Shown in pieces: positions 310 to 31,557 of a stretch of 64,000 bases of DNA (position 1 is the first letter of the stretch; every line of letters begins with the position of its first letter). The notes beneath the pieces are model-generated. The model was not told the DNA's origin, did not search any database, and saw only the letters and a list, made by a program, of their open reading frames with translations. Where the stretch lies: the IMG/VR virus record IMGVR_UViG_3300042350_004528, positions 124,001-188,000 of that record; one strand, given 5' to 3'. A program made the translations under genes and the position numbers.

Positions 310-315
310 ATCATT

Positions 316-543: not shown

Positions 544-544
544 T

Positions 545-2392: not shown

Positions 2393-2411
2393 ATTTAACC
2401 AATAATTCAAA

Positions 2412-2418: not shown

Positions 2419-2434
2419 CTAAAAATAGAAAATC

Positions 2435-3151: not shown

Positions 3152-3225
3152 TTTGTTTTTATCGTAATTTTTGTTTATTATTATAGCGTTTATTAATAAT
3201 AAAATTAAAAAATTATGACAAAAAA

Positions 3226-3648: not shown

Positions 3649-3651
3649 AAT

Positions 3652-4575: not shown

Positions 4576-4622
4576 TGCGTGTTTTTAATTTACGTTAAGA
4601 TATTTATATTAAAGTTTAACCA

Positions 4623-8690: not shown

Positions 8691-8719
8691 AAAAGGGACT
8701 CAATTGAGTCCCTTTTTTT
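8691..8719. terminator. Bidirectional intrinsic terminator
   Basis: Perfect palindrome AAAAGGGACTCAATTGAGTCCCTTTT between convergent genes. Confidence 0.9.
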
Positions 8720-9563: not shown

Positions 9564-10092
9564 AAGAAAATTCGTTTTCAGCTTCAAAATTAACGATGCT
9601 ACTGGCATATCCGTTAACAACTGGTTTTCCCGTATTATACGCACCCAATGCAAGTTGCCATGACCCATATTTCTTTTTAAGATGGGATAATATACGCATA
9701 CTTAATTCAACATTAAGTTCTAAATTATTTAACAAATCAGTTTTTGTTACAGAGAAGTCAGAAAAACTATTTGCTGTTGGCACTTGGATTTGCATGGCGC
9801 CATAAGCATTTGCTGATGATGTTAACCTTGGATTATATCTCCAATGAAAAGGCCCTCTATAACCCGTTTCATGATTAGCAACACCAAATGCAATATCGGC
9901 TGGTACATTATATTGTTTTGAATATTTTACAATATAATAATAAATTTGAATAGACGGGGGAGCATCTTGTGATATCTCCCCCAATTTGTCTATTGATTTT
10001 TCAATCTTCTTTGTTTCCGCATACCAACCTAAAAAAAGTGTCAGCATTAATACAGATACAAACAAAACAATAAGTTTACTTAAAAATTTCAT
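9556..10092 (-). CDS. Lytic transglycosylase (SLT domain) with N-terminal membrane anchor
   Basis: Catalytic ET (NHETG), AYGAMQI, LALGAYNTG. Hydrophobic residues 7-24. Confidence 0.88.
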   Translation of the reverse strand: MKFLSKLIVLFVSVLMLTLFLGWYAETKKIEKSIDKLGEISQDAPPSIQIYYYIVKYSKQYNVPADIAFGVANHETGYRGPFHWRYNPRLTSSANAYGAMQIQVPTANSFSDFSVTKTDLLNNLELNVELSMRILSHLKKKYGSWQLALGAYNTGKPVVNGYASSIVNFEAENEFSYD

Positions 10093-12686: not shown

Positions 12687-13384
12687 TGATTGAAATATAT
12701 TTTGTTATAAATTGATTCTATTTTTCTATCCTGGCCAAAAGATCTAATGTCTAGTATCTGGGCATTTTTTAATTTTAACCAAAAATTTTCTTTCGTTTCA
12801 TTAATATAATAACCACCTTCTTTTTTAAATAAATAAAGATAAAATGGTAGTTTACACAAACTAAAATAAACAGATATATTATCAAAATTAATATGACGTT
12901 CCTTTGAGTATGCGAGTTCCCTTAATATGGAAAGCATATCCATATCATCTCTTATAATTTCGTAGTTTGGAAATATATCAGATAAACCAAACGTTGCTGA
13001 TATTTTTTTAAAATCATATTTAAAATCTAAATCTAGATTTAAAGCAAAATGATAATCAATTTTAAAATCATCATGTTGTGATTCATAAAAATTGGTTGGG
13101 TATTCAAAATGTTTTATCGGTGTAAAAAAATTGTAATACTCGTCAACTGGAGTACCTAAATAATCATTTGGGTTGAATTTATAATTGTTACCGTGGTATT
13201 TTATTAAAACAACATCTTGAGTAAATTTTTGTAGCTTTAATAAACTAACTATACTGTCTACTTTTTCAATATTGTCTGGAAAAACAAAAATAATTTTTTT
13301 ATTTTTTAATTTATATAAATGTGAGCATATTGGTAATATGTAAGCTATGTCGGTTACCGTTCCTAAAAGTGTTACTGCAATCAT
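12683..13384 (-). CDS. Hypothetical protein, possibly a degenerate GT9-like glycosyltransferase
   Basis: N-terminus LGTVTDIAYILPICSHL resembles the GT9 'GD...LP' start. Overlaps the BAHT gene by 4 nt. Confidence 0.45.
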   Translation of the reverse strand: MIAVTLLGTVTDIAYILPICSHLYKLKNKKIIFVFPDNIEKVDSIVSLLKLQKFTQDVVLIKYHGNNYKFNPNDYLGTPVDEYYNFFTPIKHFEYPTNFYESQHDDFKIDYHFALNLDLDFKYDFKKISATFGLSDIFPNYEIIRDDMDMLSILRELAYSKERHINFDNISVYFSLCKLPFYLYLFKKEGGYYINETKENFWLKLKNAQILDIRSFGQDRKIESIYNKIYFNQ

Positions 13385-15428: not shown

Positions 15429-15475
15429 ACTTTTTTTTATTTTTAATAATAAGTAAAATTTATTTAAAAATAAAC

Positions 15476-15503
15476 AAAAAAGCCTAGAATATCTAGGCTT
15501 TTT
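15476..15503 (-). terminator. Intrinsic terminator after giant fibre gene
   Basis: AAAAAGCCTAGA-ATA-TCTAGGCTTTT, giving a U run on the minus strand. Confidence 0.8.
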
Positions 15504-15606
15504 CGCGTTTAAATTCGATAATAGTTAGATTTAAATTAATCTTACCTCATCGCCTGTTAGCTCAATGCGCGGATTGAGACTGTCTTTTGTGCCAAAGCAC
15601 AATTTC

Positions 15607-18600
15607 TTATGAAATTCTATGTCCATAGAAATAAGTCATTACTGTACCACCACCACCAACAATATCAGCATCACAACTTGCGAAGGTTCCTACGATAAGT
15701 CCATTACCAGTCCCGCGAACCCTAACCTCAATTTCTTGATCTGTTCCACCATCATTATAAACTACCGTATCAATATTCACTGTTTCAGGACAATCTGTTG
15801 AGGTTATATCGTAAATTGCAACTTTTAAATATGTTGCTGTTGTTACGTTGTAAAATGCAACGCTTGTATATGCCGTCCAATTGGCAAAACCAATTTGAGC
15901 TTGAATTTCCCAGGTTTCACCTGGTTGTATAACAAATCTATAACCATTAGCCGAAACATAACCTGTTACATCGTATTGTGTGGTATCAAATTGAACTGTT
16001 GTATCAGTATTTGCGGTTAGGTTTAAATCACTCTGTGCTAATGTAATTTGGAAATAATTACCGCCACCAGCTGATACACCTGATGTACCTGAAGATCCAG
16101 CTGCGCCCGTACCACCCGAAACACCTGATGTACCAGAAGAACCAGAAGTCCCTCTCGCCCCTGATGTACCAGAAGTTCCTGATGTACCAGAAGTTCCTGA
16201 AGAACCAGAAGTCCCTCTCGCCCCTGATGTACCAGAAGTTCCTGAAGAACCAGAAGTCCCTCTCGCCCCTGATGTACCAGAAGTTCCAGAAGTTCCTGAT
16301 GTACCACCACCACCACCACCACCTATGGTCGATACGGCTCGTAATGTTAAAAAATTATTTGTGACGTTGTCTACGGCTAAAACGTGAGTTGCGGCATTAT
16401 CAATTGGCGCAGTGACCTCAGTTTTACCAGCATTACCCCCCGAAAGTATGGTTTTAAACCCACTTACCGCCCCTACGTACACCCAATCAGTTAAAGCTGT
16501 AAGATCATTCCATACGAGATATGGGGCTTTTTGGCTTATAGCTGTCGCAGTTACGTTACTTAAATCAAAACTTAATGTCACATCACTGACTAATTGGCCG
16601 CCACCCGCCAAACCAACTCCCGAAATAACCGAAACATACGTTCCAGCGGTACCGAGATTACCTGAAATTCCTGATGTGCCAGATGTTCCTGATGTGCCAG
16701 ATGTTCCAGATGTTCCTGAAGAACCAGATGTTCCTGAAGAACCTGAGCCCGTTGAAGTTCCACTTGTTCCGATAGCACTATTACCAGATGTACCAGCGCT
16801 ACCAGAAGTTCCTGATGTTCCGCTTAATGCTGATATACCATTTAGTCCACTCACACCAGAAGTTCCTGTCGTACCAGAAGTTCCTGAAGAACCTGATGTT
16901 CCAGATGTGGCACTCACACCTGAAGTACCTGACGTTCCATTTCTTCCCGATGTTCCGAAGGAACCAGAAGTTCCTGATGTAGCACCTGTACTCACACCTG
17001 AAGTACCTGACGTTCCATTTCTTCCTGAAGTTCCGAAGGAACCAGAAGTACCCGATGTAACACCCGTACTCACACCTGATGTTCCAGATGTACCATTTCT
17101 TCCCGATGTTCCGAAAGCACCTGAAGTACCCGATGTAACACCCGTACTCACACCTGAAGTACCTGATGTACCATCTCTTCCTGAAGTTCCCGATGTTCCT
17201 GAAGAACCATTTGTTCCTGATGTTGCAGAAACACCACTTGTGCCAGCAGTTCCGTTTATTCCTGAAGTTCCAGAAGTTCCTGAAGAACCTGATGTTCCAG
17301 ATGTGGCACTCACACCTGATGTTCCAGATGTACCATCTCTTCCTGAAGTTCCGAACGCACCAGAAGTTCCCGATGTAACACCTGTACTCACACCTGAAGT
17401 ACCTGACGTTCCATTTCTTCCTGAAGTTCCGAAAGCACCTGAAGTTCCTGATGTAACACCCGTACTCACACCTGAAGTACCTGACGTTCCATTTCTTCCT
17501 GAAGTTCCGAAAGCACCTGAAGTACCTGATGTAACACCCGTACTCACACCTGAAGTACCTGATGTACCATCTCTTCCTGAAGTTCCGAAGGAACCAGAAG
17601 TTCCCGATGTCGCGGATATTCCCGATGTACCAGCAGTTCCGTTTATTCCTGAAGTTCCAGCTGTTCCTGAAGAACCTGATGTTCCCGATGTGGCACTCAC
17701 ACCTGAAGTACCTGACGTTCCATTTCTTCCTGAGGTTCCTGAAGAACCTGAAGTTCCTGATGTAGCAGAAACACCACTTGTTCCTGATGTTCCTGAAGAA
17801 CCAGAAGTACCGCTTGTCGCAGATACTCCCGATGTTCCAGCTGTACCATTTATTCCTGAGGTTCCCGAAGAACCTGATGTTCCTGAAGTTGCACTTATTC
17901 CTGAAGTTCCAGCTGTTCCTGAAGAACCAGAAGTACCTGATGTAGCGGATACTCCCGAAGTTCCAGCAGTTCCATTTCTACCCGAGGTTCCCGAAGATCC
18001 GCTTGTACCTGATGTTGCTGATACACCTGAAGTACCAGAAGTTCCCGATGATCCATTAGTTCCACTTGTTGCAGAAACACCCGAAGTTCCAGCAGTTCCA
18101 TTTATTCCTGATGTTCCTGACGATCCACTTGTACCTGAAGTACCTGATGTTCCGCTCGAACCAGAAGTACCTGATGTAGCGGATACTCCCGATGTTCCAG
18201 CAGTTCCATTTCTACCCGCAGTTCCACTTGAACCAGAAGTACCTGATGTTGCAGATACCCCACTTGTACCTGAAGTCCCGCTTGAACCAGCAGTTCCGCT
18301 TGTTGCTGATATACCTGAAGTTCCAGCAGTTCCATTTATACCTGAAGTTCCTGACGATCCGCTTGTACCAGAAGTACCAGCAGTTCCACTTGAACCAGAA
18401 GTTCCTGATGTTGCTGATATACCTGAAGTCCCAGCAGTTCCATTTCTACCCGAGGTTCCTGAAGAACCTGATGTTCCTGATGTTGCAGATACACCAGAAG
18501 TACCTGATGTTCCACTCGAACCAGAAGTTCCTGATGTAGCGGATACTCCCGATGTTCCAGCGGTTCCATTTATACCTGAAGTTCCTGACGATCCACTTGT

Positions 18601-21600
18601 ACCAGAAGTACCAGCAGTTCCACTTGAACCAGAAGTTCCTGATGTTGCTGATATACCTGAAGTACCAGCAGTTCCATTTCTACCCGAGGTTCCTGAAGAA
18701 CCTGATGTTCCACTTGTTGCTGATATACCTGATGTTCCACTTGAACCACTTGTTCCTGATGTTGCAGAAACACCACTTGTACCAGCAGTTCCATTTCTTC
18801 CTGAAGTACCTGAAGATCCACTTGTACCTGATGTTGCGGAAACGCCTGAGGTTCCCGAGGTTCCCGAAGAACCTGATGTACCACTTGTTGCAGAAACACC
18901 TGAAGTTCCGTTTATTCCTGATGTTCCCGATGAACCACTCGTTCCAGCAGTTCCAGAAGTTCCCGAAGATCCACTTGTACCTGATGTTGCAGATACACCT
19001 GAAGTTCCAGCAGTTCCATTTCTACCTGAAGTTCCACTTGAACCTGATGTACCTGATGTGGCAGATACTCCACTTGTTCCTGAAGAACCTGATGTTCCAC
19101 TTGTTGCTGATACACCTGAAGTTCCAGCAGTTCCATTTATTCCTGAGGTTCCTGAAGATCCACTTGTACCTGATGTCGCAGATACCCCACTTGTTCCTGA
19201 TGTACCTGAAGAACCAGAAGTCCCCGATGTCGCAGATACACCTGAAGTTCCAGCAGTTCCATTTCTTCCCGATGTACCTGAAGAACCAGAAGTTCCTGAT
19301 GTTGCAGATACCCCACTTGTTCCTGATGTTCCACTTGAACCTGATGTTCCACTTGTTGCTGATATCCCAGAGGTACCATTTATTCCCGATGTTCCACTTG
19401 AACCTGATGTTCCACTTGTTGCTGATATCCCAGAGGTACCAGCAGTTCCTGAAGAACCACTTGTACCGCTTGTCGCAGACACACCACTTGTTCCAGCAGT
19501 TCCGTTTCTACCTGAAGTTCCTGAAGAACCAGAAGTTCCTGATGTTGCAGATATCCCTGATGTTCCCGAGGTTCCTGAAGAACCTGATGTTCCACTTGTT
19601 GCTGATATCCCAGAGGTACCAGCAGTTCCGTTTATTCCAGAGGTTCCTGAAGAACCTGATGTTCCTGATGTTGCTGACACACCACTTGTTCCCGCAGTTC
19701 CCGAAGATCCACTTGTACCTGATGTTGCAGAAACACCTGAGGTTCCAGCAGTTCCATTTCTACCCGCAGTTCCCGAAGAACCCGATGTTCCTGATGTTGC
19801 AGATATCCCTGATGTTCCCGAGGTTCCTGAAGAACCAGAAGTTCCTGATGTTGCAGAAACACCTGAAGTACCAGCAGTTCCATTTATACCTGAAGTTCCT
19901 GACGATCCACTTGTACCAGAAGTACCAGCAGTTCCTGAAGAACCTGATGTACCACTTGTTGCAGAAACACCTGAGGTTCCAGCAGTTCCATTTCTACCCG
20001 AGGTTCCTGAAGAACCTGATGTACCTGATGTTGCAGACACTCCTGATGTACCAGCAGTTCCCGAAGAACCTGATGTTCCTGATGTCGCAGATACACCTGA
20101 AGTTCCAGCAGTTCCATTTATTCCTGAAGTTCCTGAAGAACCATTTGTTCCTGATGTCGCAGAAACACCACTTGTCCCTGATGTACCTGAAGAACCAGAA
20201 GTTCCTGATGTTGCTGATATTCCTGATGTACCAGCGGTTCCATTTCTACCTGAAGTACCTGAAGAACCACTTGTTCCTGATGTTGCTGAAACTCCCGAAG
20301 TACCAGAAGTTCCAGAGGAACCTGATGTTCCTGAAGTTGCACTTATTCCTGAAGTACCAGCCGTACCGTTTATTCCCGAAGTACCTGACGATCCACTTGT
20401 ACCAGAAGTACCTGATGTTCCGCTCGAACCAGAAGTTCCTGATGTTGCGGATACACCTGAAGTTCCAGCAGTTCCGTTTATTCCAGAGGTTCCTGAAGAA
20501 CCTGATGTTCCTGATGTTGCAGATATTCCACTTGTACCAGCTGTACCTGAAGAACCTGAAGTTCCGCTTGTTGCTGATATCCCTGAAGTCCCAGCAGTTC
20601 CATTTCTACCTGAGGTACCACTTGAACCACTCGTTCCCGATGTAGCGGATACACCACTTGTCCCTGATGTACCTGAAGAACCAGCAGTTCCACTTGTTGC
20701 AGAAACACCTGAAGTTCCAGCAGTTCCATTTATTCCTGAAGTTCCTGAAGAACCTGAAGTTCCTGAAGTTGCACTTATTCCTGAAGTTCCAGCTGTTCCT
20801 GAAGAACCTGATGTTCCTGATGTGGCACTTATTCCTGAAGTTCCAGCAGTTCCATTTCTACCCGAGGTTCCTGAAGATCCAGAAGTACCTGATGTTGCAG
20901 AAACACCTGATGTACCTGAAGTACCTGAAGAACCACTTGTTCCCGATGTTGCAGAAACACCTGATGTACCAGCGGTTCCATTTATTCCTGATGTTCCCGA
21001 TGAACCAGAAGTTCCGCTTGTTGCGGATGTACCTGATGTTCCAGCAGTACCACTTGAACCAGAAGTACCTGATGTTGCAGAAACACCTGATGTACCTGAG
21101 GTTCCATTTCTACCAGCTGTTCCTGAAGAACCCGATGTCCCACTTGTAGCGGATACACCACTTGTTCCAGCTGTACCTGAAGAACCTGATGTACCTGATG
21201 TCGCAGATATACCTGATGTTCCAGCAGTTCCATTTCTACCAGCTGTTCCTGAAGAACCCGATGTCCCACTTGTAGCGGATACTCCACTTGTTCCTGATGT
21301 TCCTGAAGAACCAGAAGTTCCTGATGTTGCTGATGCACCTGAAGTTCCAGCGGTACCATTTATTCCTGAAGTTCCCGATGATCCATTTGTACCAGCCGTA
21401 CCAGAAGTGCCAGAAGATCCACTTGTTCCGCTTGTTGCGGATATACCTGATGTTCCAGCAGTTCCATTTATACCTGAAGTTCCAGAAGAACCAGAAGTTC
21501 CGCTTGTTGCAGATATTCCTGATGTTCCAGCGGTACCATTAATACCTGATGTACCAGCTGTTCCTGAAGAACCAGAAGTTCCGCTTGTTGCAGATATTCC

Positions 21601-24600
21601 TGAAGTCCCAGCAGTTCCGTTTCTACCAGAAGTACCTGAAGAACCAGAAGTACCTGATGTTGCAGAAACACCTGATGTTCCCGAGGTTCCTGAAGAACCA
21701 GAAGTACCTGATGTGGCGGATACACCTGAAGTCCCAGCAGTTCCATTTATTCCTGATGTTCCACTTGAACCTGATGTACCTGATGTCGCAGAAACACCAC
21801 TTGTTCCTGATGTTCCACTTGAACCAGAAGTACCCGATGTCGCAGACACACCTGATGTTGCTGATACCCCCGATGTACCTGATGTTCCGCTCGATCCACT
21901 TGTTCCTGATGTTGCAGAAACACCACTTGTTCCAGCTGTACCTGAAGAACCTGAAGAACCTGATGTTCCTGATGTTGCAGATATTCCACTTGTACCAGCA
22001 GTTCCATTTCTACCTGAGGTACCACTTGAACCACTCGTTCCCGATGTTGCGGATACTCCACTTGTTCCTGATGTTCCCGAAGAACCAGAAGTTCCTGATG
22101 TTGCTGAAACACCTGATGTACCAGAAGTTCCATTTATTCCTGAAGTTCCCGATGAACCACTTGTACCAGCAGTACCTGAGGTTCCTGAAGAACCAGAAGT
22201 ACCTGATGTTGCGGATATTCCTGAAGTTCCAGCAGTTCCATTTATTCCAGCTGTTCCTGAAGAACCATTTGTTCCTGATGTCGCAGATACACCTGAAGTC
22301 CCCGCAGTTCCACTTGAACCAGAAGTTCCCGATGTTGCTGATATCCCTGAAGTTCCAGCAGTTCCGTTTCTTCCTGAGGTTCCTGAAGAGCCCGATGTTC
22401 CTGATGTAGCAGAAACACCACTTGTTCCCGCAGTTCCCGAAGAACCCGATGTTCCTGAGGTTGCTGAAACACCCGATGTTCCAGCTGTACCATTTATTCC
22501 AGATGTTCCTGAAGAACCTGATGTTCCTGAAGTTGCTGATACACCCGATGTTCCACTTGTTCCCGAAGAACCTGATGTTCCTGAGGTTGCTGAAACACCC
22601 GATGTTCCAGCTGTACCATTTATTCCTGAGGTTCCTGAAGAACCTGATGTCCCACTTGTAGCGGACACACCACTTGTTCCCGCAGTTCCTGAAGAACCAG
22701 AAGTACCTGATGTTGCTGAAACACCCGATGTTCCAGCTGTACCATTTATTCCTGAAGTTCCAGAGGAACCTGATGTTCCTGAAGTTGCTGATATTCCTGA
22801 AGTACCAGCTGTTCCTGAAGAACCAGAAGTTCCGCTTGTTGCGGATATTCCTGAAGTTCCAGCAGTTCCGTTTCTTCCTGAGGTTCCTGAAGAACCAGAA
22901 GTACCTGATGTTGCCGATACTCCCGATGTTCCTGAGGTTCCTGAAGAACCTGATGTTCCTGATGTAGCAGAAACACCTGATGTACCAGCTGTACCATTTA
23001 TCCCCGAAGTTCCCGCAGTTCCCGAAGAACCTGATGTTCCTGATGTTGCAGAAACACCACTTGTTCCAGCTGTACCTGAAGAACCTGATGTTCCACTTGT
23101 TGCCGATATTCCTGATGTACCAGAAGTTCCATTTCTTCCTGAAGTACCTGAAGAACCACTTGTTCCTGATGTTGCTGAAACACCACTTGTTCCAGCTGTA
23201 CCTGAAGAACCAGATGTACCTGATGTTGCGGAAACACCTGATGTTCCAGCGGTTCCGTTTATTCCTGATGTTCCACTTGAACCAGAAGTACCTGATGTTG
23301 CAGATACCCCACTTGTACCTGAAGTCCCGCTTGAACCAGCAGTTCCGCTTGTTGCTGATATACCTGAAGTTCCAGCAGTTCCATTTCTACCTGATGTTCC
23401 ACTTGAACCCGATGTACCTGATGTTGCAGATACTCCTGAAGTTCCAGCAGTACCACTTGAACCTGATGTACCTGATGTGGCAGACACACCACTTGTACCA
23501 GCAGTTCCATTTCTTCCTGATGTTCCACTTGAACCTGATGTTCCTGATGTTGCAGACACTCCTGATGTACCTGAGGTTCCTGAAGATCCACTTGTACCTG
23601 ATGTTGCTGATATCCCCGAAGTTCCAGCAGTTCCATTTATTCCTGATGTACCTGAGGTTCCACTTGAACCCGATGTTGCAGACACACCTGATGTGCCTGA
23701 GGTTCCCGAAGAACCTGATGTACCTGATGTCGCAGATATACCTGATGTTCCAGCAGTTCCATTTATTCCTGAAGTACCTGAAGATCCGTTTGTACCTGAT
23801 GTTGCGGAAACACCTGAGGTTCCCGAGGTTCCCGAAGAACCCGATGTTCCTGATGTGGCAGACACACCACTTGTACCAGCAGTTCCATTTCTTCCCGATG
23901 TACCTGAAGTTCCGCTTGAACCAGCAGTACCGCTTGTCGCAGATACTCCACTTGTACCAGCAGTTCCGTTTATTCCTGATGTTCCAGCAGTACCACTTGA
24001 ACCTGATGTACCTGATGTTGCAGACACTCCTGATGTTCCAGCAGTACCATTTATTCCTGAAGTACCCGAAGATCCGTTTGTACCAGCAGTCCCTGAAGTC
24101 CCCGAAGATCCACTTGTACCTGATGTCGCTGATGCCCCTGAAGTTCCAGCGGTTCCGTTTATTCCTGATGTTCCACTTGAACCAGATGTTCCACTTGTTG
24201 CCGATATCCCTGATGTACCAGCGGTTCCATTTCTACCTGAAGTACCACTTGAACCTGATGTACCTGATGTTGCAGAAACACCTGATGTACCTGAAGTTCC
24301 ATTTATCCCTGATGTGCCTGAAGTACCGCTTGAACCTGATGTTCCTGATGTTGCAGACACTCCTGAAGTTCCTGATGTTCCCGAAGAACCAGAAGTTCCT
24401 GATGTTGCAGACACTCCTGAAGTTCCTGATGTTCCATTTATTCCTGATGTTCCACTTGAACCTGATGTACCTGATGTGGCAGATACTCCTGAAGTTCCCG
24501 AAGTACCTGAAGAACCAGATGTACCTGATGTTGCGGAAACACCTGATGTTCCAGCGGTTCCGTTTATTCCTGATGTTCCACTTGAACCAGATGTTCCTGA

Positions 24601-27600
24601 TGTGGCGGATACACCCGAAGTTCCCGAAGTACCTGAAGAACCAGAAGTTCCTGATGTCGCAGATACCCCACTTGTACCAGCGGTTCCATTTATTCCTGAT
24701 GTTCCACTTGAACCTGATGTTCCTGATGTGGCAGATACTCCACTTGTACCAGAGGTACCACTTGAACCCGATGTACCTGATGTTGCAGATACTCCACTTG
24801 TACCAGCAGTTCCGTTTATTCCTGAAGTACCTGAAGATCCACTTGTACCTGATGTTGCTGATATACCTGAAGTTCCAGCAGTTCCATTTCTACCAGCTGT
24901 ACCTGAAGATCCTGATGTTCCACTTGTCGCAGATACCCCACTTGTACCAGCGGTTCCATTTATTCCTGATGTTCCAGAAGAACCTGATGTTCCTGATGTG
25001 GCAGATACACCCGAAGTTCCTGAAGTTCCACTTGAACCCGATGTTCCTGATGTGGCAGACACACCACTTGTACCAGCAGTTCCGTTTATTCCTGATGTTC
25101 CAGCAGTACCACTTGAACCTGATGTACCTGATGTTGCAGACACACCACTTGTTCCAGCAGTTCCATTTCTACCAGCGGTTCCACTTGAACCATTTGTTCC
25201 AGATGTTGCAGATACCCCTGAAGTTCCTGATGTTCCGTTTATTCCCGAAGTTCCTGAAGAACCTGATGTTCCTGATGTTGCGGAAACACCTGAAGTTCCC
25301 GATGTTCCATTTCTACCTGATGTTCCCGAAGAACCTGAGGTTCCTGAAGAACCATTTGTTCCCGATGTTCCACTTATTGCTGATATACCATTTAATCCAT
25401 CAATACCCGATGTACCAGTTGAACCACTTGTTCCTGATGTTGCAGATACACCTGATGTTCCAGCACTCCCACTTCTACCTGATGTTCCCGAAGAACCTGA
25501 GGTTCCTGAAGAACCATTTGTTCCCGATGTTCCACTTATTGCTGATATACCATTTAATCCATCAATACCCGATGTACCAGTTGAACCAGAAGTTCCACTT
25601 GTCGCAGACACTCCTGATGTTCCAGCAGTACCATTTCTTCCTGAGGTTCCCGAAGAACCTGAGGTTCCACTTGTTGCAGATACTCCACTTGAACCTGATG
25701 TACCTGATGTCGCAGATACTCCCGATGTACCAGAGGTACCCGATGTTCCTGAAGAACCAGAAGTTCCAGATGTTGCAGAAACACCTGATGTTCCCGATGT
25801 TCCTGAAGAACCTGATGTTCCTGATGTGGCAGACACACCACTTGTACCAGCAGTTCCATTTATTCCTGATGTTCCCGAAGAACCAGATGTACCTGATGTT
25901 GCCGATATACCTGAAGTTCCAGCGGTACCATTTATTCCAGATGTTCCATTGGAACCACTTGTTCCCGATGTCGCAGACACACCTGAAGTCCCAGCGGTTC
26001 CATTTCTCCCCGATGTTCCACTTGAACCTGATGTTCCACTTGTAGCGGATACTCCCGATGTACCAGCAGTACCGTTTATTCCTGAAGTACCTGAAGAACC
26101 ATTTGTTCCAGATGTGGCAGATACTCCACTTGAACCAGCAGTACCGCTTGTCGCAGATACTCCACTTGTTCCCGAGGTTCCTGAAGACCCAGACGTTCCT
26201 GATGTTGCAGATACACCTGATGTTCCAGCACTCCCACTTCTACCTGATGTTCCCGAAGAACCTGATGTTCCTGATGTCGCAGACACACCTGAAGTTCCAG
26301 AGGTTCCGTTTATTCCCGATGTACCTGAAGAACCAGATGTCCCTGATGTTCCACTTATCGCTGATGTACCAGCAGTACCGTTTATTCCTGAAGTACCTGA
26401 AGAACCATTTGTTCCAGATGTGGCAGACACACCTGAAGTTCCTGATGTTCCATTTATTCCTGATGTACCTGATGAACCACTTGTACCAGCAGTTCCACTT
26501 ATCGCTGATGTACCAGCAGTACCATTTATTCCCGAAGTTCCTGATGACCCAGAAGTTCCTGATGTTGCCGATATTCCCGAAGTTCCTGATGTTCCATTTA
26601 TTCCTGATGTACCTGATGAACCACTTGTTCCTGATGTCGCAGACACACCACTTGTACCAGCAGTTCCATTTGAACCTGATGTTCCTGATGTTGCTGATAT
26701 CCCAGAAGTACCTGATATCCCAGAAGTACCTGATGAACCACTTGTACCAGCAGTTCCATTTCTTCCTGAGGTTCCGCTTGAGCCAGAAGTTCCTGAAGTT
26801 CCACTCTCACCTGAAGTTCCCGAAGAACCTGAAGTTCCTGAAGAACCACTTGTACCGCTTGAACCAGAAGTTCCCGAAGAACCTGAAGTATTCGATTCAC
26901 CTGATGTACCAGCACCACCTGATGTTCCAGCAGTACCACCTGTTCCCGAGGTTCCAGCCTGGGATGTACTTGTTCCAGATGTACCAGCACCACCTGATGT
27001 TCCAGAAGTACCACCTGTTCCCGAGGTTCCAGCCTGGGATGTACTTGTTCCAGATGTACCAGCACCACCTGATGTTCCAGCAGTACCACCTGTTCCCGAG
27101 GTTCCACTTATTGCTGATATACCATTTAATCCATCAATACCCGATGTACCAGTTGAACCAGAAGTTCCTGATGTTGCTGATATCCCCGAAGTTCCAGCAG
27201 TTCCATTTCTACCTGATGTTCCACTTGAACCAGAAGTTCCTGATGTTGCTGATATCCCTGATGTACCAGAGGTACCCGATGTTCCTGAAGAACCATTTGT
27301 TCCGCTTGTCGCCGATACCCCTGATGTTCCCGAAGAACCCGAAGTTCCAGCAGTTCCTGAAGAACCATTTGTTCCCGATGTCGCAGATATCCCACTTGTT
27401 CCCGATGTTCCATTTATTCCTGATGTACCTGAAGATCCACTTGAACCTGATGTACCTGATGTGGCAGATACACCTGATGTTCCAGCGGTTCCATTTATTC
27501 CTGAAGTCCCCGAAGATCCACTTGTTCCAGCAGTACCTGATGTACCCGAAGAACCCGATGTTCCCGAAGATCCGCTAGATCCTGAAGTCCCCGAACTTCC

Positions 27601-30600
27601 GCTTGAGCCAGAAGTACCTGATGTTCCTGAACTCCCCGAACTTCCGCTTGAGCCAGAAGTACCTGATGTTCCTGATGTTGCGGAAACACCTGATGTACCA
27701 GCGGTTCCATTTCTTCCTGAAGTTCCGCTTGAACCAGAAGTTCCAGATGTTGCAGAAACACCTGAAGTTCCATTTAATCCTGATGTTCCCGAAGAACCTG
27801 ATGTTCCCGAAGAACCTGATGTTCCCGAAGAACCTGATGTACCAGTAGTTCCTGATGTACCTGAAGAACCTGAGGTTCCAGAAGAACCTGATGTTCCCGA
27901 AGAACCTGACGTACCTGATGTCGCAGATATTCCAGAAGTACCTGAAGTTCCAGATGATCCACTTTCACCCGATGTTCCCGAGGTTCCAGACGTTGCGGAA
28001 CCACCACTCTCACCCGCTAGTCCATTAACACCCGAAGTACCTGAAGAACCTGATGTTCCTGATGTTGCGGAAATGCCTGAAGTACCACTTGTACCGTTTG
28101 AGCCTGATGTTCCAGAAGTACCTGAAGACCCAGACGTTCCCGAAGAACCACTTGTCCCATTTGTACCCGATTCACCTGAAGTACCTGAAGACCCAGACGT
28201 TCCTGAAGTTCCATTTGTTCCTGATTTACCTGAAGACCCAGACGTTCCTGAAGTTCCACTTTCGCCAGAAGTTCCTGAAGTTCCATTTGTTCCTGATTCA
28301 CCTGATGTTCCCGAAGAACCACTTGTACCACTTGTTCCAGAAGAACCATTTGTACCATTTGTTCCAGATGTTCCACTTTCACCAGAAGTTCCCGAAGTTC
28401 CACTTTCACCCGAAGTTCCTGAAGAACCTGATGTACCTGATGTTGCAGATATCCCTGATGTTCCCGAAGAACCATTTGTACCACTTTCACCTGAACTTCC
28501 ACTTTCACCCGAACTTCCACTTGTGCCAGAAGTTCCCGAACTTCCACTTGAACCTGATGTACCTGAACTTCCACTTTCACCCGAAGTACCGTTTGTACCA
28601 CCCTCACCCGAAGTTCCATTTGTTCCTGAAGTTCCCGAAGTTCCACTTATTGCTGATATACCATTTAATCCATCAATACCCGATGTACCAGTTGAACCAG
28701 AAGTTCCTGATGTTGCTGATATACCTGAAGTTCCAGCAGTTCCATTTATTCCCGATGTTCCACTTGAACCAGAAGTTCCCGAAGAACCATTTGTACCAGA
28801 AGTTCCCGAAGAACCATTTGTACCACTTTCACCTGAAGTACCGTTTGTACCCGACTCACCAGATGTCCCTGATGTTCCCGATGTACCTGAAGAACCAGAT
28901 GTTCCTGATGTTCCTGAAGAACCATTTGTACCGCTCTCACCTGAACTTCCGCTTGAACCAGAAGAACCTGATGTTCCACTTGAGCCAGAAGAACCTGATG
29001 TTCCACTTGAGCCAAATGTTCCTGAGGTTCCAGAAGAACCATTTGTACCACTCTCACCTGAACTTCCACTCTCACCCGAAGTTCCTGAGGTTCCAGAAGA
29101 ACCTGATGTTCCACTTGAACCAGAAGTACCCGATGTTCCCGAAGAACCATTTGTACCACTTTCACCTGAAGTACCACTTTCACCCGAACTTCCACTTGAA
29201 CCAGAAGTACCTGATGTTCCTGAAGAACCAGAAGTACCTGATGTTCCTGAAGTACCGTTTGTACCACTTTCACCTGAAGTACCACTTTCACCCGATGTTC
29301 CTGAGGTTCCTGATGTACCTGAGGAACCACTTGTTCCAGAAGTTCCCGATGTTCCCGAAGAACCATTTGTACCACTTTCACCTGAAGTACCACTTTCACC
29401 TGAAGAACCCGAAGTTCCTGATGTACCTGAGGAACCACTTGTACCTGAAGTTCCAGATGATCCACTTTCACCCGATGTGCCTGAAGTTCCAGAAGTTGCG
29501 GAACCACCACTCTCACCCGCTAGTCCATTAACACCCGAAGTTCCTGAAGAACCAGAAGTTCCCGAAGAACCCGATGTCCCTGAAGTTGCTGAAAAACCTG
29601 AAGTACCGTTTGTACCCGACTCACCCGAAGTTCCCGAAGTTCCCGAAGAACCTGATGTTCCCGATGTTCCCGAAGAACCCGATGTCCCTGAAGTTGCTGA
29701 AAAACCTGAAGTACCATTTGTGCCCGACTCACCCGAAGTTCCTGAAGTTCCTGAAGAACCCGATGTCCCAGAAGTTCCTGAAGAACCCGATGTTCCTGAA
29801 GTTCCACTTTCACCTGAAGTACCGTTTGTACCCGACTCACCCGATGTTCCCGATGTTCCCGATGTACCTGAGGAACCACTTGTTCCCGAAGAACCCGAAG
29901 AACCTGATGTTCCTGAAGTTCCATTTGAACCTGATGTTCCTGAAGTTCCACTTTCACCCGAAGTTCCACTTGAGCCAGAAGTACCTGAGGAACCACTTGT
30001 TCCCGAAGAACCTGAAGAACCTGATGTACCTGATGTTCCTGAAGAACCATTTGTACCACTCTCACCTGAAGTACCACTCTCACCCGAAGAACCTGATGTT
30101 CCTGATGTTCCAGATGATCCACTTGTACCTGATGTTCCTGATGTTCCCGAAGAACCATTTGTCCCTGACTCACCTGAAGTACCGTTTGTTCCCGACTCAC
30201 CAGATGTCCCCGATGTCCCCGATGTACCTGATGAACCAGAAGTTCCCGAAGAACCAGATGTCCCTGATGTTCCGTTTGTTCCAGATTCACCATTTGTACC
30301 ATTTTCACCAGACGTTCCTGAAGTTCCTGAAGTTCCGCTTGTTCCTGATGTTCCTGAAGAACCAGAAGTACCTGATGTTCCGTTTGTTCCAGATTCACCA
30401 TTTGTACCATTTTCACCAGACGTTCCTGAAGTTCCTGAAGTTCCGCTTGTTCCTGATGTTCCTGAAGAACCAGACGTTCCTGAAGTTCCTGAAGTTCCGC
30501 TTGTTCCAGATTCACCATTTGTACCATTTTCACCCGAAGTTCCTGAAGAACCAGAAGTTCCCGAAGAACCAGAAGTTCCCGAAGTTCCACTTGTACCCGA

Positions 30601-31557
30601 TGTACCAGACGTACCGTTTGTCCCACTTTCACCCGATGTTCCTGATGTTCCTGTTGTCCCCGATGTTCCTGATGTGCCAGATGTGCTTGGCAACACCATA
30701 TATTTGTCAATTCTTTTTGCTACGATTATAACAGAGGGCGCCGCTGGATAATTAACCCCAGCCCCTAAAGCTGTTATTTGTACATGTTGATTTGTGGATA
30801 AAAATACAAACTCAACACAATCATTAGCTTGTAAATTAAATTGATATGCAACAAATGGTAATTGATATGCGCCATTTCCGCTTAATGTTATAGTTGATGT
30901 TGTCCTGGGCTCGTCATTGCCATTAATTCTTGCCCAAATTATAATATCAGTACCGTTTGCATTTGATGCGGCTTCAATTTGAGCTGAATATCCTATTTCA
31001 TAAACACCAGCATTATCTACGGTAATTTGTGAATTATTTTGTACACTAATGCCATTTGCAATTTCGGTTGTATTATATTCCCAAACGGTTGGTATACTTG
31101 AACCACTGACTACTTGTGTGGTTGAATCACTAAACGACCCATAATAATTATCTCCAGTCCACGAAGTACCAGATGAACCTGCTGTTCCCGAAGTACCAGT
31201 AGTTCCTGATGTACCTGAAGAACCAGAAGTTCCCGACTCACCAGATGTCCCCGATGTACCTGAGTAACCAGATGTTCCTGAGGTACTAGCGGCGGAATAT
31301 GTGAATTGACCCGTTAGCGGATCAAATGTTACGACATATTGCGGATTTAATTCTTGAGTTAATTCCTGATTAACCCAATTACTACCATTATAAACTAAAA
31401 TACTACCAGCTGTTGCGCCAGTTGTTATTATTACATCAGTTAGGTCATCCAGACCTAAGTTCTCAATTGCATTTTTTAGATTATCAAAATTCGCGTCAAG
31501 TTCGCCGAATGTTAAAGGTCTACCTAGTGCGCATCTTAAATATATTGTAACCGCCAT
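15607..31557 (-). CDS. Giant (5316 aa) Gly-X-Y Ser/Thr-rich collagen-like fibre protein with C1q/BclA-like globular domains
   Basis: N-terminus [21 protein letters not shown] resembles phage fibre attachment segments. Beta-sandwich at about aa 135-285 (YYGSF...[11 protein letters not shown]). About 4700 aa of period-3 [19 protein letters not shown]-terminal beta domain (TTVQFDT..YD...RFVIQ). TATTTAT upstream. Confidence 0.85.
16660..30690 (-). repeat. About 14-kb period-9-nt coding repeat (Gly-X-Y triplets) with synonymous variation
   Basis: Plus strand is built of units such as GTTCCTGAT, GTTCCTGAA, GAACCAGAA, GTACCTGAT. Confidence 0.95.

What the first reader, a model, noticed from the sequence alone, without database searches (positions are those of the whole stretch)
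15607..31557. Proline-free Gly-X-Y 'collagen' about 4700 residues long with C1q/BclA-like caps
Seen: near-strict period 3 with Gly (periodically Ala, in [12 protein letters not shown]) first and almost only T/S/E/N/V/I/R/A elsewhere. No Pro in the main repeat. Beta-sandwich domains near both ends. Inference: as a triple helix (about 0.29 nm per residue) this would be roughly 1.3-1.4 micrometres, far longer than normal tail fibres. Alternatively it folds as a compact polyglycine-II bundle like snow-flea antifreeze protein, and the regular Thr/Ser face could bind ice or polysaccharide.
Basis: partly seen in the sequence, partly recalled or inferred. Interest (0 to 1): 0.8.

Follow-up and report, generated by a model that had tools for sequence, protein, structure and literature searches.

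The report
Giant proline-free collagen-like phage fibre gene
A roughly 300-kb freshwater phage carries a real 16-kb gene for a 5,316-residue protein that is almost entirely proline-free Gly-X-Y repeat, flanked by C1q/BclA-like domains of a kind known to form trimers and followed by protein-glycosylating enzymes; it is most likely a sugar-coated collagen-like thread over a micrometre long, far longer than any described phage fibre.

Summary
The ORF at 15607-31557 (minus strand) encodes 5,316 aa. Residues 294-4974 form 1,545 Gly/Ala-X-Y triplets with no Pro and 53% Ser+Thr.

AlphaFold2 and Foldseek show BclA/C1q/TNF-type jelly rolls at aa 133-293 and 5169-5316. Comparison with a strain variant shows purifying selection in this frame. 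The long opposite-strand ORF is a by-product of the repeat.

No exact DNA repeat reaches 125 nt. A sister phage contig carries a complete 4,627-aa version, also Pro-free, and three more contigs carry truncated versions over 3,300 aa. An assembly artefact is therefore unlikely.

The gene is accessory. One syntenic relative lacks it, and another has a 424-aa short form with the same N-terminus. C-terminal tips differ between relatives, as in receptor-binding fibres.

Downstream lie two glycosyltransferases. One contains a TibC/Aah-type protein O-heptosyltransferase half (304.9 bits, cut-off 200; four iron-finger Cys aligned).

Best reading: a homotrimeric, probably O-glycosylated, collagen-like virion fibre of about 1.3 µm with hinges every 18-24 residues. 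Triple-helix formation, virion location and glycosylation are inferred, not shown. The compact polyglycine-II alternative is disfavoured because only one position in three is Gly.

Verdict: new variant of a known kind.

The parts
15607..31557 (-). Giant collagen-like fibre gene: 5,316 codons plus stop, predicted 453.5 kDa per chain, pI 4.7, 5.3% of the 298.8-kb contig
   Evidence: Purifying selection against strain variant L083: 81 synonymous / 17 non-synonymous changes overall; 68/10 in the repeat alone, all conservative and none at Gly.
31279..31557 (-). N-terminal module, aa 1-93, with the motifs [10 protein letters not shown] and DLTDV...G..LVYNG.NWVN. It is conserved in the giant and short relatives and is the presumed attachment end.
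   Evidence: 66-71% identical in L082, L084 and P0002. The second motif recurs, often in tandem, in other phage fibre-like proteins. No family assignment could be confirmed.
31162..31278 (-). Short Gly-X-Y segment, 13 triplets, aa 94-132
   Evidence: Pfam Collagen match at aa 94-130
30679..31161 (-). N-proximal BclA/C1q/TNF-like jelly-roll domain, aa 133-293; inferred trimerisation node
   Evidence: AF2 pLDDT 91.7. Foldseek PDB top hits are BclA 3tyj/1wck, F-BclA, BxpB/ExsFA, 4-1BBL and C1q, E about 1e-7. Weak Pfam BclA_C match, E 1e-3, below cut-off. Terminal or within one residue of the end in most of 100 short homologues.
16636..30678 (-). Main Pro-free Gly/Ala-X-Y repeat, aa 294-4974: 1,545 triplets, 159 G-to-A interruptions in G[V/I]S-ATS, 42-aa/84-aa super-repeats
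   Evidence: DNA repeats are only 70-85% alike and no exact repeat reaches 125 nt. GC3 is 0.13, so the 47% GC comes from amino-acid composition.
16324..16635 (-). Globular module, aa 4975-5078, with a GL.GGG motif. It is shared with the short form P0002, the sister giant L004 and L208.
   Evidence: sequence comparison by eye; no Pfam hit
16054..16323 (-). Second short Gly-X-Y segment, 30 triplets, aa 5079-5168
15610..16053 (-). C-terminal C1q-like jelly-roll domain, aa 5169-5316; presumed distal head or receptor-binding tip. A rare family.
   Evidence: AF2 pLDDT 83.2. Foldseek hits: Caprin-2 C1q, C1QL, collagen X NC1, adiponectin, phage phi812 spike knob, TM 0.66-0.70. Only 9 relatives among 1.84 billion representatives.
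15474..15506 (-). Terminator-like hairpin (15-bp stem plus T run) between the giant gene and the first glycosyltransferase
   Evidence: consensus scan only
13413..15428 (-). Glycosyltransferase GT671 (Glycos_transf_1 core). It lies directly downstream and is the marker gene used to find related loci.
12683..13384 (-). Conserved 233-aa ORF of unknown function between the two glycosyltransferases
   Evidence: 35-41% identical in L002, L004 and L005. No family hit.
10545..12686 (-). Two-domain glycosyltransferase GT713: Glycos_transf_1-type N half, TibC/Aah-type protein O-heptosyltransferase C half (aa 342-710)
   Evidence: TIGR04414 at 304.9 bits against a cut-off of 200. PDB TibC 4rap, E 1e-58. 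The four Cys that align with TibC Cys (its iron finger, as I recall it) are all present.
31608..34064 (-). ClpA/ClpB/ClpC-like double AAA+ ATPase directly upstream on the same strand. It is conserved in relatives with and without the giant gene.
16412..30751 (+). Spurious antisense shadow ORF (4,779 aa, P/V/E/D-rich). Not a gene.
   Evidence: It is confined to the repeat with no flanking domains. In this frame the strain differences give 44 synonymous / 34 non-synonymous changes, including V>E and L>D, against 68/10 for the sense frame.

Best explanation
The gene encodes a homotrimeric fibre of a freshwater jumbo myovirus. The phage is a distant T4-like virus. On gene content it may belong to or sit near the recently named 'moraphage' lineage, whose hosts are predicted to be Bacteroidota.

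Three chains would be brought into register by the BclA/C1q-like jelly roll placed just after the N-terminal attachment module. The 1,545 proline-free Gly-X-Y triplets would then zip into a collagen-type triple helix, capped by a second short collagen segment and a C1q-like C-terminal head.

Fully extended, the helix is about 1.3 µm. The regular Gly-to-Ala interruptions (G[V/I]S-ATS every 18 or 24 residues, i.e. every 5-7 nm) should act as joints, so it is a flexible thread rather than a rod.

The Ser/Thr-covered surface (53% of residues) is probably O-glycosylated in the cytoplasm by the downstream enzymes, one of them a TibC/Aah-type protein heptosyltransferase. Glycosylation would replace proline and hydroxyproline as the stabiliser of the helix.

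Functionally it would be an accessory, exchangeable long-reach adhesin. It has a conserved N-terminus on the virion side, a spacer of expandable length, and a variable C-terminal tip for first contact with host cells or particles in dilute lake water.

Shown:
- the gene, its frame and selection on it;
- the repeat anatomy;
- the fold class of both caps;
- relatives of giant and short length;
- the identity of the glycosyltransferase family.

Inferred:
- triple-helix formation;
- trimer state;
- glycosylation of this protein;
- presence and place on the virion;
- adhesin role.
For: 1. Real coding gene. The sense frame gives 68 synonymous / 10 conservative non-synonymous differences in the repeat against a strain variant. 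No Gly changes, and there is one in-frame 3-aa indel.

2. Strict one-in-three Gly over 4,681 aa with 0 Pro. The Pfam Collagen match is very strong.

3. Both caps are confidently predicted jelly rolls whose best structural matches are obligate trimers attached to collagen stalks: BclA, F-BclA, C1q, collagen X NC1, adiponectin.

4. Hundreds of short environmental phage proteins combine GTS repeats with the same domain. In most of the 100 examined the domain ends at or within one residue of the C-terminus.

5. Length is reproducible:
- no exact DNA repeat of 125 nt or more;
- identical sequence over the first 3.8 kb of the gene in a contig from another metagenome;
- exact unique pieces at flank-level depth in two independent lake runs;
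- a complete 4,627-aa sister gene without Ns and without Pro in its repeat;
- truncated versions over 3,300 aa in L082, L047 and L208.

6. Fibre logic. The N-terminus is conserved (66-71%). C-termini are swapped: C1q-like here and in L208, Peptidase_S74 chaperone in the sister giant and in the 424-aa short form, other folds in L002, L005 and L047.

7. Glycosylation. GT713 is an above-threshold TibC/Aah equivalog with all four aligned Cys conserved. GT671-o233-GT713 follows a collagen-like or Ser/Thr-rich fibre gene in at least 12 of 79 loci spanning 42-53% GT identity.

8. Native to the phage: GC3 of 0.13 matches the AT-rich genome.

9. The window carries a T4-type head module: portal, protease and gp23 capsid genes.
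Against: - No experiment or trimer model shows a triple helix. A Pro-free GTS sequence is expected to have low intrinsic helix stability (my knowledge of host-guest collagen peptide work, not tested here).
- The 159 Gly-to-Ala substitutions would locally perturb a helix.
- Virion association is unproven. The N-terminal module matched no known attachment domain. The language-model lead to T4 gp9/gp10 N-domain (0.91, 154 shared features) was not confirmed by Pfam, a PDB profile search or hhalign.
- The GT pair is conserved in 79 loci, most without any collagen-like neighbour. That includes the closest syntenic relative L003, which lacks the giant gene. Conversely, the short-form locus L206 has no GTs. 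The GTs therefore must have other or additional substrates.
- Known TibC/Aah enzymes act on beta-helical autotransporter repeats, not on collagen (established knowledge).
- A terminator-like hairpin separates the giant gene from the GTs.
- Transcript evidence is minimal: two exact 151-nt contigs in one metatranscriptome, and DNA carry-over is not excluded.
- Total length rests on short-read assemblies only.
Confidence: 0.55

Rival explanations
1. Mucin-like brush. The repeat is an intrinsically disordered, heavily O-glycosylated Ser/Thr-rich polymer. It is held at its ends by trimeric domains but does not form a triple helix. It would act as a hydrated coat, shield or sticky tether on the virion.
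For: The core is 53% Ser+Thr with no Pro. A protein O-glycosyltransferase sits in the operon. Gly-to-Ala breaks occur every 18-24 residues. Intrinsic helix propensity of GTS is expected to be low (my knowledge, not tested).
Against: Disorder does not require Gly at exactly every third residue. The register runs unbroken for up to 1,038 triplets. It is preserved between strains and in a sister gene of 4,627 aa, and indels come in whole triplets. The flanking domains are those that nucleate collagen helices elsewhere.
Confidence: 0.17
2. Compact polyglycine-II bundle. The chain folds back on itself into stacked antiparallel PPII helices, like snow-flea antifreeze protein. This would present a flat Thr/Ser face that binds ice or polysaccharide.
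For: The sequence has a tripeptide period, is Thr/Ser-rich, and comes from a cold-lake habitat. The regular 18/24-residue units bounded by VSATS could in principle be hairpin arms.
Against: Gly makes up only 30% of the core and sits almost exclusively at position 1. X and Y are Gly in 5 of 404 triplets in the first block and in none of 1,038 in the second. From my knowledge of known polyglycine-II bundles, they need small residues on two faces (about 45% Gly plus Ala). The core has no Cys and no turn-like breaks of register. The 18 and 24 units are unequal. Caps of a trimer-forming fold class at both ends fit a parallel three-chain helix, not a monomeric bundle.
Confidence: 0.05
3. Assembly artefact. 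The gene is real, but its 14-kb repeat length or order is inflated or chimeric. Short reads from many similar GTS-coding genes in the lake community would have been threaded together.
For: Word depth inside the repeat is 10-250 times that of the flank in lake runs, so many look-alike sequences coexist. Two other assemblies of the same or a near-identical phage break inside the repeat (L081, L083). 12% of 31-mers in the gene are repeated. No long read was available.
Against: No exact repeat reaches 125 nt, and 97% of 51-mers are unique. The reading frame is open over 15,951 nt. L081 agrees base for base over 3.8 kb. Exact pieces occur at flank-level depth along the repeat in two runs. A different contig gives an uninterrupted 13,881-nt sister gene, and three more exceed 3,300 codons. 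The super-repeat structure changes smoothly along the gene.
Confidence: 0.1
4. Non-virion product. The protein is made during infection but is not part of the particle. For example, it could be an intracellular or released scaffold, an aggregation or biofilm-like matrix, or a decoy that modifies the infected cell surface.
For: The gene is accessory. It is absent in the syntenic relative L003 and replaced by a 424-aa form in L206. It sits beside non-structural genes (a ClpA/B-like ATPase and glycosyltransferases). No attachment-domain homology was confirmed.
Against: The architecture (conserved N-terminus, spacer, swapped C-terminal tips, an S74 chaperone in relatives) is that of phage fibres. 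PHROG matches are to tail-fibre families. The gene lies next to the head module. A relative of the C1q-like domain in Acinetobacter phage phiAC-1 is encoded directly after the capsid gene.
Confidence: 0.1

Closest known systems
BclA / F-BclA of the Bacillus exosporium and ENA fibres (collagen-like stalk plus C-terminal TNF/C1q-like trimer; Thr O-glycosylated)
   Same: Best structural match of the N-proximal cap (3tyj, 1wck, 9h38). Both have a Gly-X-Y stalk rich in Thr, trimeric jelly-roll nucleation, and a dedicated glycosylation system (the last from my knowledge).
   Different: From my knowledge, BclA repeats are GPT (Pro-rich) with at most some tens of triplets, against 1,545 Pro-free triplets here. 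The Pfam BclA_C score is below threshold (19.4 against 38). Here the cap sits at the N-proximal end with a second, different cap at the C-terminus. This is a phage protein, not a spore protein.
Short environmental phage proteins with GTS repeats plus the same C1q-like domain (P0008, P0035, P0058 and others; homologues without repeats in Limnohabitans phages DC31/DC33 and Acinetobacter phage phiAC-1)
   Same: True sequence homologues of aa 133-293 (E down to 1e-77). The repeat chemistry is the same ([10 protein letters not shown]...), and they come from aquatic phages.
   Different: They are 200-520 aa with tens of triplets and usually carry the domain at the C-terminus. The window protein is 10-25 times longer with the domain near the N-terminus. 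None has been characterised.
SPP1 gp12 (collagen-like capsid decoration trimer), and collagen-like segments in staphylococcal and lactococcal phage fibres
   Same: These are phage virion proteins in which a short Gly-X-Y segment forms or is predicted to form a trimeric spike (PMC7602432, PMC7048315).
   Different: They have only a handful of triplets and no C1q-like caps. No glycosyltransferase linkage is reported.
C1q, collagen X NC1, adiponectin (metazoan collagen stalk plus gC1q head)
   Same: Best structural matches of the C-terminal cap, TM about 0.7. From my knowledge, the head nucleates the trimer and binds ligands, and C1q itself has a Gly-to-Ala kink in its stalk.
   Different: No detectable sequence homology (no Pfam C1q hit). 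Metazoan stalks are rich in Pro/Hyp and under 100-150 triplets.
Annelid and vestimentiferan cuticle collagens (Riftia, Alvinella), recalled from the literature
   Same: They are micrometre-long (1.5-2.5 µm) single triple helices with low Hyp, stabilised by glycosylated Thr. This is the nearest precedent for how a Pro-poor helix of this length could be stable.
   Different: They are animal extracellular proteins with Thr in Y carrying galactose. Here Thr is mainly in X and Ser in Y, the sugar is unknown, and the protein is viral. This comparison rests on my memory and was not tested.
AIDA-I/Aah and TibA/TibC (autotransporter adhesins hyper-heptosylated on Ser by a dedicated cytoplasmic enzyme)
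   Same: The GT713 C half is an above-threshold member of the TibC/Aah family with all four aligned Cys conserved. In both cases a repetitive Ser-rich adhesin gene is encoded next to its presumed modifying enzyme.
   Different: The known substrates are beta-helices, not collagen-like repeats. The phage enzyme is fused to a second GT domain and accompanied by another GT. The substrate here is unproven.
Mycobacteriophage virion glycosylation (Freeman et al. 2023, cited in PMC12619734)
   Same: Phage-encoded glycosyltransferases next to structural genes O-glycosylate virion proteins.
   Different: The enzymes and targets differ: short C-terminal tails of capsid and tail-tube proteins in actinophages.
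Snow-flea antifreeze protein (polyglycine-II bundle)
   Same: Tripeptide Gly period and PPII-type backbone.
   Different: That protein has about 45% Gly with Gly/Ala on two faces, is about 80 residues long and is disulfide-stabilised (my knowledge). The window repeat fails the tested composition features.

Membership tests
Collagen-like (Gly-X-Y triple-helix repeat) proteins, Pfam PF01391 | Gly at every third residue over long uninterrupted stretches | tested here: met
   1,545 in-register triplets. 1,386 start with Gly and 159 with Ala in a fixed context. The longest strict Gly run is 109 triplets.
Collagen-like (Gly-X-Y triple-helix repeat) proteins, Pfam PF01391 | Match to the family profile above the curated threshold | tested here: met
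   401 bits against a cut-off of 27.2 on a 1,000-aa slice. The terminal short segments score 24.8 and 31.9 bits.
Collagen-like (Gly-X-Y triple-helix repeat) proteins, Pfam PF01391 | Adjacent non-collagenous trimerisation domain | tested here: met
   Two predicted jelly rolls of the BclA/C1q/TNF class. The trimer state itself is not modelled.
Collagen-like (Gly-X-Y triple-helix repeat) proteins, Pfam PF01391 | High imino-acid (Pro/Hyp) content in X/Y; typical, though not strictly defining for bacterial collagens | tested here: not met
   0 Pro in aa 294-4974. The sister giant has 0 Pro in aa 196-4337.
Collagen-like (Gly-X-Y triple-helix repeat) proteins, Pfam PF01391 | Actual triple-helix formation (CD 225-nm maximum, cooperative melt, protease resistance) | not testable with these tools
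   Only monomer prediction is available. Needs recombinant protein.
BclA_C / C1q / TNF-like jelly-roll superfamily | Ten-stranded jelly-roll fold superposable on family members | tested here: met
   N-proximal domain: TMq 0.57-0.67, prob 1.00 to BclA, BxpB, 4-1BBL, EDA and C1q. C-terminal domain: TMq 0.66-0.71 to C1q-family domains and collagen X NC1.
BclA_C / C1q / TNF-like jelly-roll superfamily | Sequence-profile membership (Pfam BclA_C or C1q above threshold) | tested here: not met
   BclA_C scores 19.4 bits against a cut-off of 38, E 1e-3, for the N-proximal domain. Nothing matched the C-terminal domain. The two caps are barely related to each other (hhalign prob 31%).
Polyglycine-II bundle proteins (snow-flea AFP type) | Gly/Ala on at least two of three helix faces (Gly about 45%) and short helices joined by turns, often with disulfides | tested here: not met
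   Gly is 30% and confined to position 1. X/Y are Gly in 5 of 404 triplets and 0 of 1,038 in the two large blocks. The core has no Cys. The defining criteria are from my knowledge of the solved structures.
Phage tail fibres or spikes with a C-terminal intramolecular chaperone (Peptidase_S74) | S74 chaperone domain at the C-terminus | tested here: not met
   Absent from the window protein. Present in the sister giant L004 (59.4 bits against 22) and in the short form P0002.
T4 gp9/gp10-type baseplate attachment (PF07880 N-domain) | Detectable similarity of the N-terminus to the gp9/gp10 N-domain | tested here: inconclusive
   Language-model feature score 0.91 with 154 shared features, below the 170 guide value. 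No Pfam hit at E<=10. hhalign probability is 1.6% to T4 gp9 and 0.3% to gp10.
Bacterial autotransporter heptosyltransferases (TibC/Aah, TIGR04414), for GT713 | Equivalog profile score above the curated cut-off | tested here: met
   304.9 bits against 200, aa 342-710. TibC 4rap E 1.3e-58.
Bacterial autotransporter heptosyltransferases (TibC/Aah, TIGR04414), for GT713 | Four-Cys iron-finger motif | tested here: met
   C-x-G-C ... W-C-P ... F-E-C aligned column for column with TibC. That these Cys are the iron ligands is from my memory of the TibC structure papers.
Bacterial autotransporter heptosyltransferases (TibC/Aah, TIGR04414), for GT713 | Heptosylation of Ser in the neighbouring repetitive protein | not testable with these tools
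   Needs co-expression and mass spectrometry. Adjacency is partial: 12 of 79 loci.
'Moraphage' lineage of large aquatic phages (PMC12619734) | Core gene set and phylogenetic placement | not tested
   Gene content is consistent: ClpA-like ATPase, class II aaRS-like gene, peptidase, several GTs, T4-type head genes, about 300 kb, freshwater. No tree was built, and the moraphage genomes are not in the searched collections.

The most novel reading that the evidence does not exclude
A clade of freshwater jumbo phages builds micrometre-long (1.2-1.4 µm), completely proline-free collagen triple helices. Glycosylation of Ser/Thr by a phage TibC-like protein glycosyltransferase would stabilise them in place of imino acids. 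The phages would use them as jointed 'fishing lines' with exchangeable tips to capture hosts. This would be the longest collagen-type helix known outside annelid cuticle, and a new chemical solution for collagen stability. Gene callers have hidden it by annotating the antisense shadow ORF instead.
Probability: 0.35. Interest if true: 0.85.

Novelty: new variant of a known kind. Interest (0 to 1): 0.7.

Why it matters
If the thread is real, it changes the picture of how far a phage can reach. 1.3 µm is about ten capsid diameters, and about nine times the T4 long tail fibre (roughly 145 nm, from my knowledge). That affects encounter-rate models for viruses in dilute waters.

For collagen biochemistry, it offers a natural 1,545-triplet helix with no proline. 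It would be a clean test of whether glycosylated Ser/Thr alone can hold a triple helix. With no prolyl isomerisation to slow folding, it could also serve as a recombinant scaffold.

For genome annotation, it shows that giant GTS genes are systematically missed. In one relative the caller chose the antisense shadow and left a 193-aa stub. This explains why protein databases of billions of entries returned almost no long relatives.

It also links a family known from E. coli adhesin glycosylation (TibC/Aah) to phage structural genes.

Tried and rejected
- **Word-indexed protein searches restricted to 2,900-9,300 aa**. They returned only one unrelated 3,469-aa fibre with short GTS segments (P0001). 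This is uninformative because giant relatives are mis-called in databases.
- **Exact 36-mer from mid-repeat.** Only the source contig holds it in IMG/VR, and none in the JGI metagenome collection.
- **C-terminal 342 aa against metagenome contigs**. Matches were almost all to the short GXY segment. This shows only that GTS repeats are very common (over 599 stretches) and gave no new C-terminal homologues.
- **N-terminal attachment domain.** The Atlas lead to T4 gp9/gp10 N-domain was followed with Pfam at E<=10, a PDB profile search and hhalign against T4 gp9 and gp10. None supported it.
- **Are the two caps duplicates of each other?** hhalign gives only 31% probability over 42 columns. They share a fold class but are not demonstrable paralogues.
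- **Is the ClpA/B-like ATPase a dedicated chaperone for the giant protein?** Rejected as specific, because it is conserved next to the locus in L003, which lacks the gene. The moraphage paper lists a ClpA-type ATPase among the lineage's widely shared genes.
- **Is the antisense ORF the real gene?** Rejected.
- **Foreign origin because of 47% GC?** Rejected. GC3 is 0.13, lower than in neighbouring genes.
- **tRNA genes for Gly/Ser/Thr in the window:** none.
- **Literature searches** for giant or proline-free collagen-like phage proteins found no description. The moraphage paper does not contain the word collagen.

Full report
**What is there**

The window is part of IMG/VR contig IMGVR_UViG_3300042350_004528 (298,833 bp). 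This is an AT-rich phage (about 32% GC outside the repeat). It has a T4-type head module: portal gp20, prohead protease and major capsid gp23. Its nearest capsid relatives are only about 33% identical: uncultured huge phages LR756508 and LR756511, and Microcystis phage Mel-JY01.

The phage recurs in at least 19 lake and freshwater sequencing runs from different studies and years. Several features fit the 'moraphage' lineage described in 2025, whose hosts are predicted to be Bacteroidota (PMC12619734):
- gene content (ClpA/B-like ATPase, class II aaRS-like gene, M42-like peptidase, several glycosyltransferases);
- genome size;
- habitat.

I did not test this placement.

On the minus strand, 15607-31557 is one ORF of 5,316 codons. 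Its anatomy is:

| Residues | Feature |
|---|---|
| 1-93 | N-terminal module |
| 94-132 | 13 Gly-X-Y triplets |
| 133-293 | globular domain |
| 294-4974 | main repeat |
| 4975-5078 | second globular module |
| 5079-5168 | 30 triplets |
| 5169-5316 | C-terminal globular domain |

The main repeat holds 1,545 in-register triplets with 0 Pro and 53% Ser+Thr. Gly sits only at position 1. The commonest triplets are GTS (645), GSS (237), ATS (151), GTA (117) and GVS (108).

Ala replaces Gly 159 times, nearly always in G[V/I]S-ATS, spaced 18 or 24 residues apart through the C-terminal three quarters. The N-terminal quarter has unbroken Gly runs of up to 109 triplets. Only ten short register breaks occur.

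**Is it a real gene of that length?**

A strain variant from another metagenome (L083) differs from the window at 98 of 629 aligned codons. Of these, 81 are synonymous and 17 non-synonymous. Within the repeat the split is 68/10. The replacements are T/S exchanges plus S>N and T>I, never at Gly, and the only indel is one whole triplet.

The 4,779-codon ORF on the plus strand is a shadow. Its third codon positions coincide with those of the sense frame, and it stays open because the repeat lacks Tyr and His and has almost no Gln. It is confined to the repeat. In its frame the same strain differences give 44/34, with radical V>E and L>D changes.

The raised GC (47%) comes from codon positions 1 and 2. 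GC3 is 0.13, so the gene is native to this AT-rich genome.

The repeat units are old and diverged at the DNA level (70-85% matches; periods of 126 and 252 nt). No exact repeat reaches 125 nt, and 97% of 51-mers are unique.

Three lines of evidence from other data agree with the assembly:
- A contig from a different sample (L081) is identical over 10 kb of flank and the first 3,812 nt of the gene before it ends.
- In Logan contigs of two lake runs, exact pieces of 128-207 nt occur along the repeat at the same depth as the unique flank (about 9 and about 33). Total word depth there is 10-250 times higher, because look-alike GTS-coding DNA from other organisms is abundant.
- The gene has relatives of similar size. 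IMGVR_UViG_3300043409_001932 carries a complete, N-free 13,881-nt gene (4,627 aa, no Pro between aa 196 and 4337) with a 69% identical N-terminus. L082, L047 and L208 carry versions over 3,300-3,500 codons cut by contig or locus ends.

I put the artefact hypothesis at about 0.1. Only long reads can close it.

**The caps**

An alignment of 92 homologues gave an AF2 model of aa 130-295 with pLDDT 91.7. Its best PDB matches are:
- the BclA C-terminal domain (3tyj, 1wck) and F-BclA;
- BxpB/ExsFA;
- TNF-family ligands;
- C1q domains.

The C-terminal domain belongs to a rare family, with 9 relatives among 1.84 billion representatives. It modelled at pLDDT 83.2. It matches C1q-family heads, collagen X NC1 and adiponectin at TM about 0.7. 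It also matches the knob of the phage phi812 central spike (TM 0.66) and a cyanophage short-tail-fibre binding domain (TM 0.60).

As far as I know, these matched families assemble as trimers, and several nucleate collagen stalks. At the sequence level neither cap reaches a Pfam threshold, so I file them by fold, not by family.

**Relatives and what they say about function**

The N-proximal domain has hundreds of homologues among 200-520-aa environmental phage proteins. There it follows a short GTS repeat and, in most of the 100 examined, ends at or within one residue of the C-terminus. This is the BclA/C1q layout. Cultured phages also carry the domain: Limnohabitans phages DC31 and DC33, and Acinetobacter phage phiAC-1, where it is encoded directly after the capsid gene.

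The giant proteins and a 424-aa short form (P0002) share the N-terminal module (66-71% identity). Their C-terminal ends differ:

| Protein or locus | C-terminal end |
|---|---|
| Window and L208 | C1q-like |
| Sister giant (L004) and P0002 | Peptidase_S74 intramolecular chaperone |
| L002, L005, L047 | unrelated ends |

A conserved N-terminus, a spacer of variable length and swapped tips form the signature of phage receptor-binding fibres.

Synteny shows the gene is accessory:
- In L003 (capsid 75% identical) the ClpA/B-like gene is followed directly by GT671, with no fibre gene.
- In L206 the short form sits in that place, without the GTs.

Where the fibre attaches is open. It could be the head, neck or baseplate. 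A language-model lead to the T4 gp9/gp10 N-domain was not confirmed.

**Glycosylation**

Downstream on the same strand lie GT671, a conserved 233-aa ORF and GT713. The C-terminal half of GT713 is an above-threshold match to TIGR04414, the Aah/TibC autotransporter O-heptosyltransferase (304.9 bits against 200). It matches TibC structure 4rap at E 1e-58, and all four aligned Cys are conserved. From memory of the TibC structure papers, these Cys form its iron finger.

From established knowledge, these enzymes hyper-glycosylate Ser in repetitive adhesins in the cytoplasm. The GT671-o233-GT713 block occurs in 79 IMG/VR loci. In at least 12 of them, spanning 42-53% GT identity, the gene just upstream is collagen-like.

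This makes O-glycosylation of the Ser/Thr-covered thread a reasonable hypothesis. Several points count against a simple one-enzyme, one-substrate link:
- most loci have no such neighbour;
- L003 keeps the GTs without the fibre;
- a terminator-like hairpin separates the fibre gene from the GTs;
- known TibC substrates are beta-helices.

**How it most likely works**

Exactly one Gly per triplet, trimer-forming caps and whole-triplet indels all fit a parallel three-chain collagen helix.

Placing a trimerisation domain just after the N-terminal module would set the register before the long, nearly uniform repeat is made. Without proline, no prolyl isomerisation would slow the zipper (inference from classical collagen folding work). 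The sister giant, with an S74 chaperone, may instead nucleate from the C-terminus.

Without imino acids, stability must come from elsewhere. Glycosylated Ser/Thr, as I recall for vent-worm cuticle collagen, is the obvious candidate. The cold habitat also lowers the requirement.

The regular Gly-to-Ala sites, each preceded by Val or Ile, should give joints every 5-7 nm. I therefore expect a flexible thread with a C1q-like tip. A plausible role is a long-reach first-contact adhesin in dilute water.

My estimates are:

| Reading | Confidence |
|---|---|
| Collagen-like virion fibre | 0.55 |
| Disordered mucin-like brush | 0.17 |
| Assembly artefact | 0.10 |
| Non-virion product | 0.10 |
| Compact polyglycine-II bundle | 0.05 |

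The polyglycine-II option is low because Gly is confined to one face and the core has no Cys.

**Novelty**

Collagen-like segments in phage fibres and GTS repeats in aquatic phage proteins are known or common. Searches of 8.4 million papers found no description of a giant or proline-free collagen-like phage protein. The moraphage paper never mentions collagen.

These genes are also hidden from protein databases. In L208 the caller annotated the antisense shadow as a 3,106-aa protein and left the true C-terminus as a 193-aa stub.

I classify the finding as a new variant of a known kind. It is extreme in length, imino-acid-free, double-capped, and linked to a TibC-type protein glycosyltransferase.

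Noticed in passing
window 16412-30751 (+); L208 433-9753 (-): The repeat casts a 4,779-codon antisense shadow ORF (P/V/E/D-rich) whose third codon positions coincide with the sense frame. In relative L208 the public gene call took such a shadow (3,106 aa) and left the true C-terminus as a 193-aa stub (P0122). Giant GTS genes are therefore mis-annotated and under-represented in protein databases.
   Followed up: yes
window 10545-12686 (-): GT713 is a fusion of a Glycos_transf_1-type domain with a TibC/Aah-type protein O-heptosyltransferase (TIGR04414 above cut-off; all four aligned Cys conserved). It is conserved in 79 IMG/VR phage loci. I found no description of a phage-borne member of this family.
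   Followed up: partly
window 15474-15506 (-): A strong terminator-like hairpin (15-bp stem plus T run) lies between the giant gene's stop and the GT671 start. The fibre gene may be its own transcription unit.
   Followed up: no
L003 7447-11905; L206 3-4592: The locus between the ClpA/B-like gene and the GT or peptidase genes is a swap site. It is empty in L003, holds a 424-aa short fibre (same N-terminus, C1q-like domain, S74 chaperone) without GTs in L206, and holds 4.6-5.3-kaa giants in the window, L082 and L084/L004.
   Followed up: yes
window 25601-30600 (read laying): Summed word depth inside the repeat is 10-250 times the depth of the phage's unique flank in two lake metagenomes. Near-identical GTS-coding DNA from many other organisms or phages is therefore very abundant in lakes.
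   Followed up: partly
window 31608-34064 (-): An 818-aa double-AAA+ ClpA/ClpB/ClpC-like ATPase with a UVR motif lies directly upstream. It is 70-88% identical in relatives whether or not they carry the giant gene. The moraphage paper lists a ClpA-type ATPase among that lineage's widely shared genes. Its role is unknown.
   Followed up: partly
window 8718-10092 (-): An M42-like peptidase (316 aa) and an SLT lytic transglycosylase (178 aa) overlap by about 110 nt as listed ORFs, at the end of the same minus-strand block next to the capsid gene. The true starts were not resolved.
   Followed up: no
window 36374-37411 (+): The thymidylate synthase is 345 aa, but it matches the 266-position Pfam model end to end. 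It therefore carries about 80 extra residues of insertion.
   Followed up: no
window 55863-56708 (+) and 57451-59307 (+): A 281-aa class II aaRS-like protein (tRNA-synt_2, catalytic core only) and a 618-aa ParB_N plus NUDIX fusion protein. No tRNA genes occur in the 64-kb window.
   Followed up: no
window 34640-36325 (+): A 561-aa protein with two Laminin_G_3 (concanavalin-like lectin) domains matches a PHROG virion structural family. It is divergently transcribed from the ClpA/B-giant block and could be another adhesin.
   Followed up: no
L205 4395-5444 (Acinetobacter phage phiAC-1 gene 0044): A cultured-phage homologue of the C1q-like domain, without collagen repeats, is encoded immediately after the putative capsid gene. 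This is the usual place of head decoration proteins and hints that this domain family can be head-borne.
   Followed up: partly
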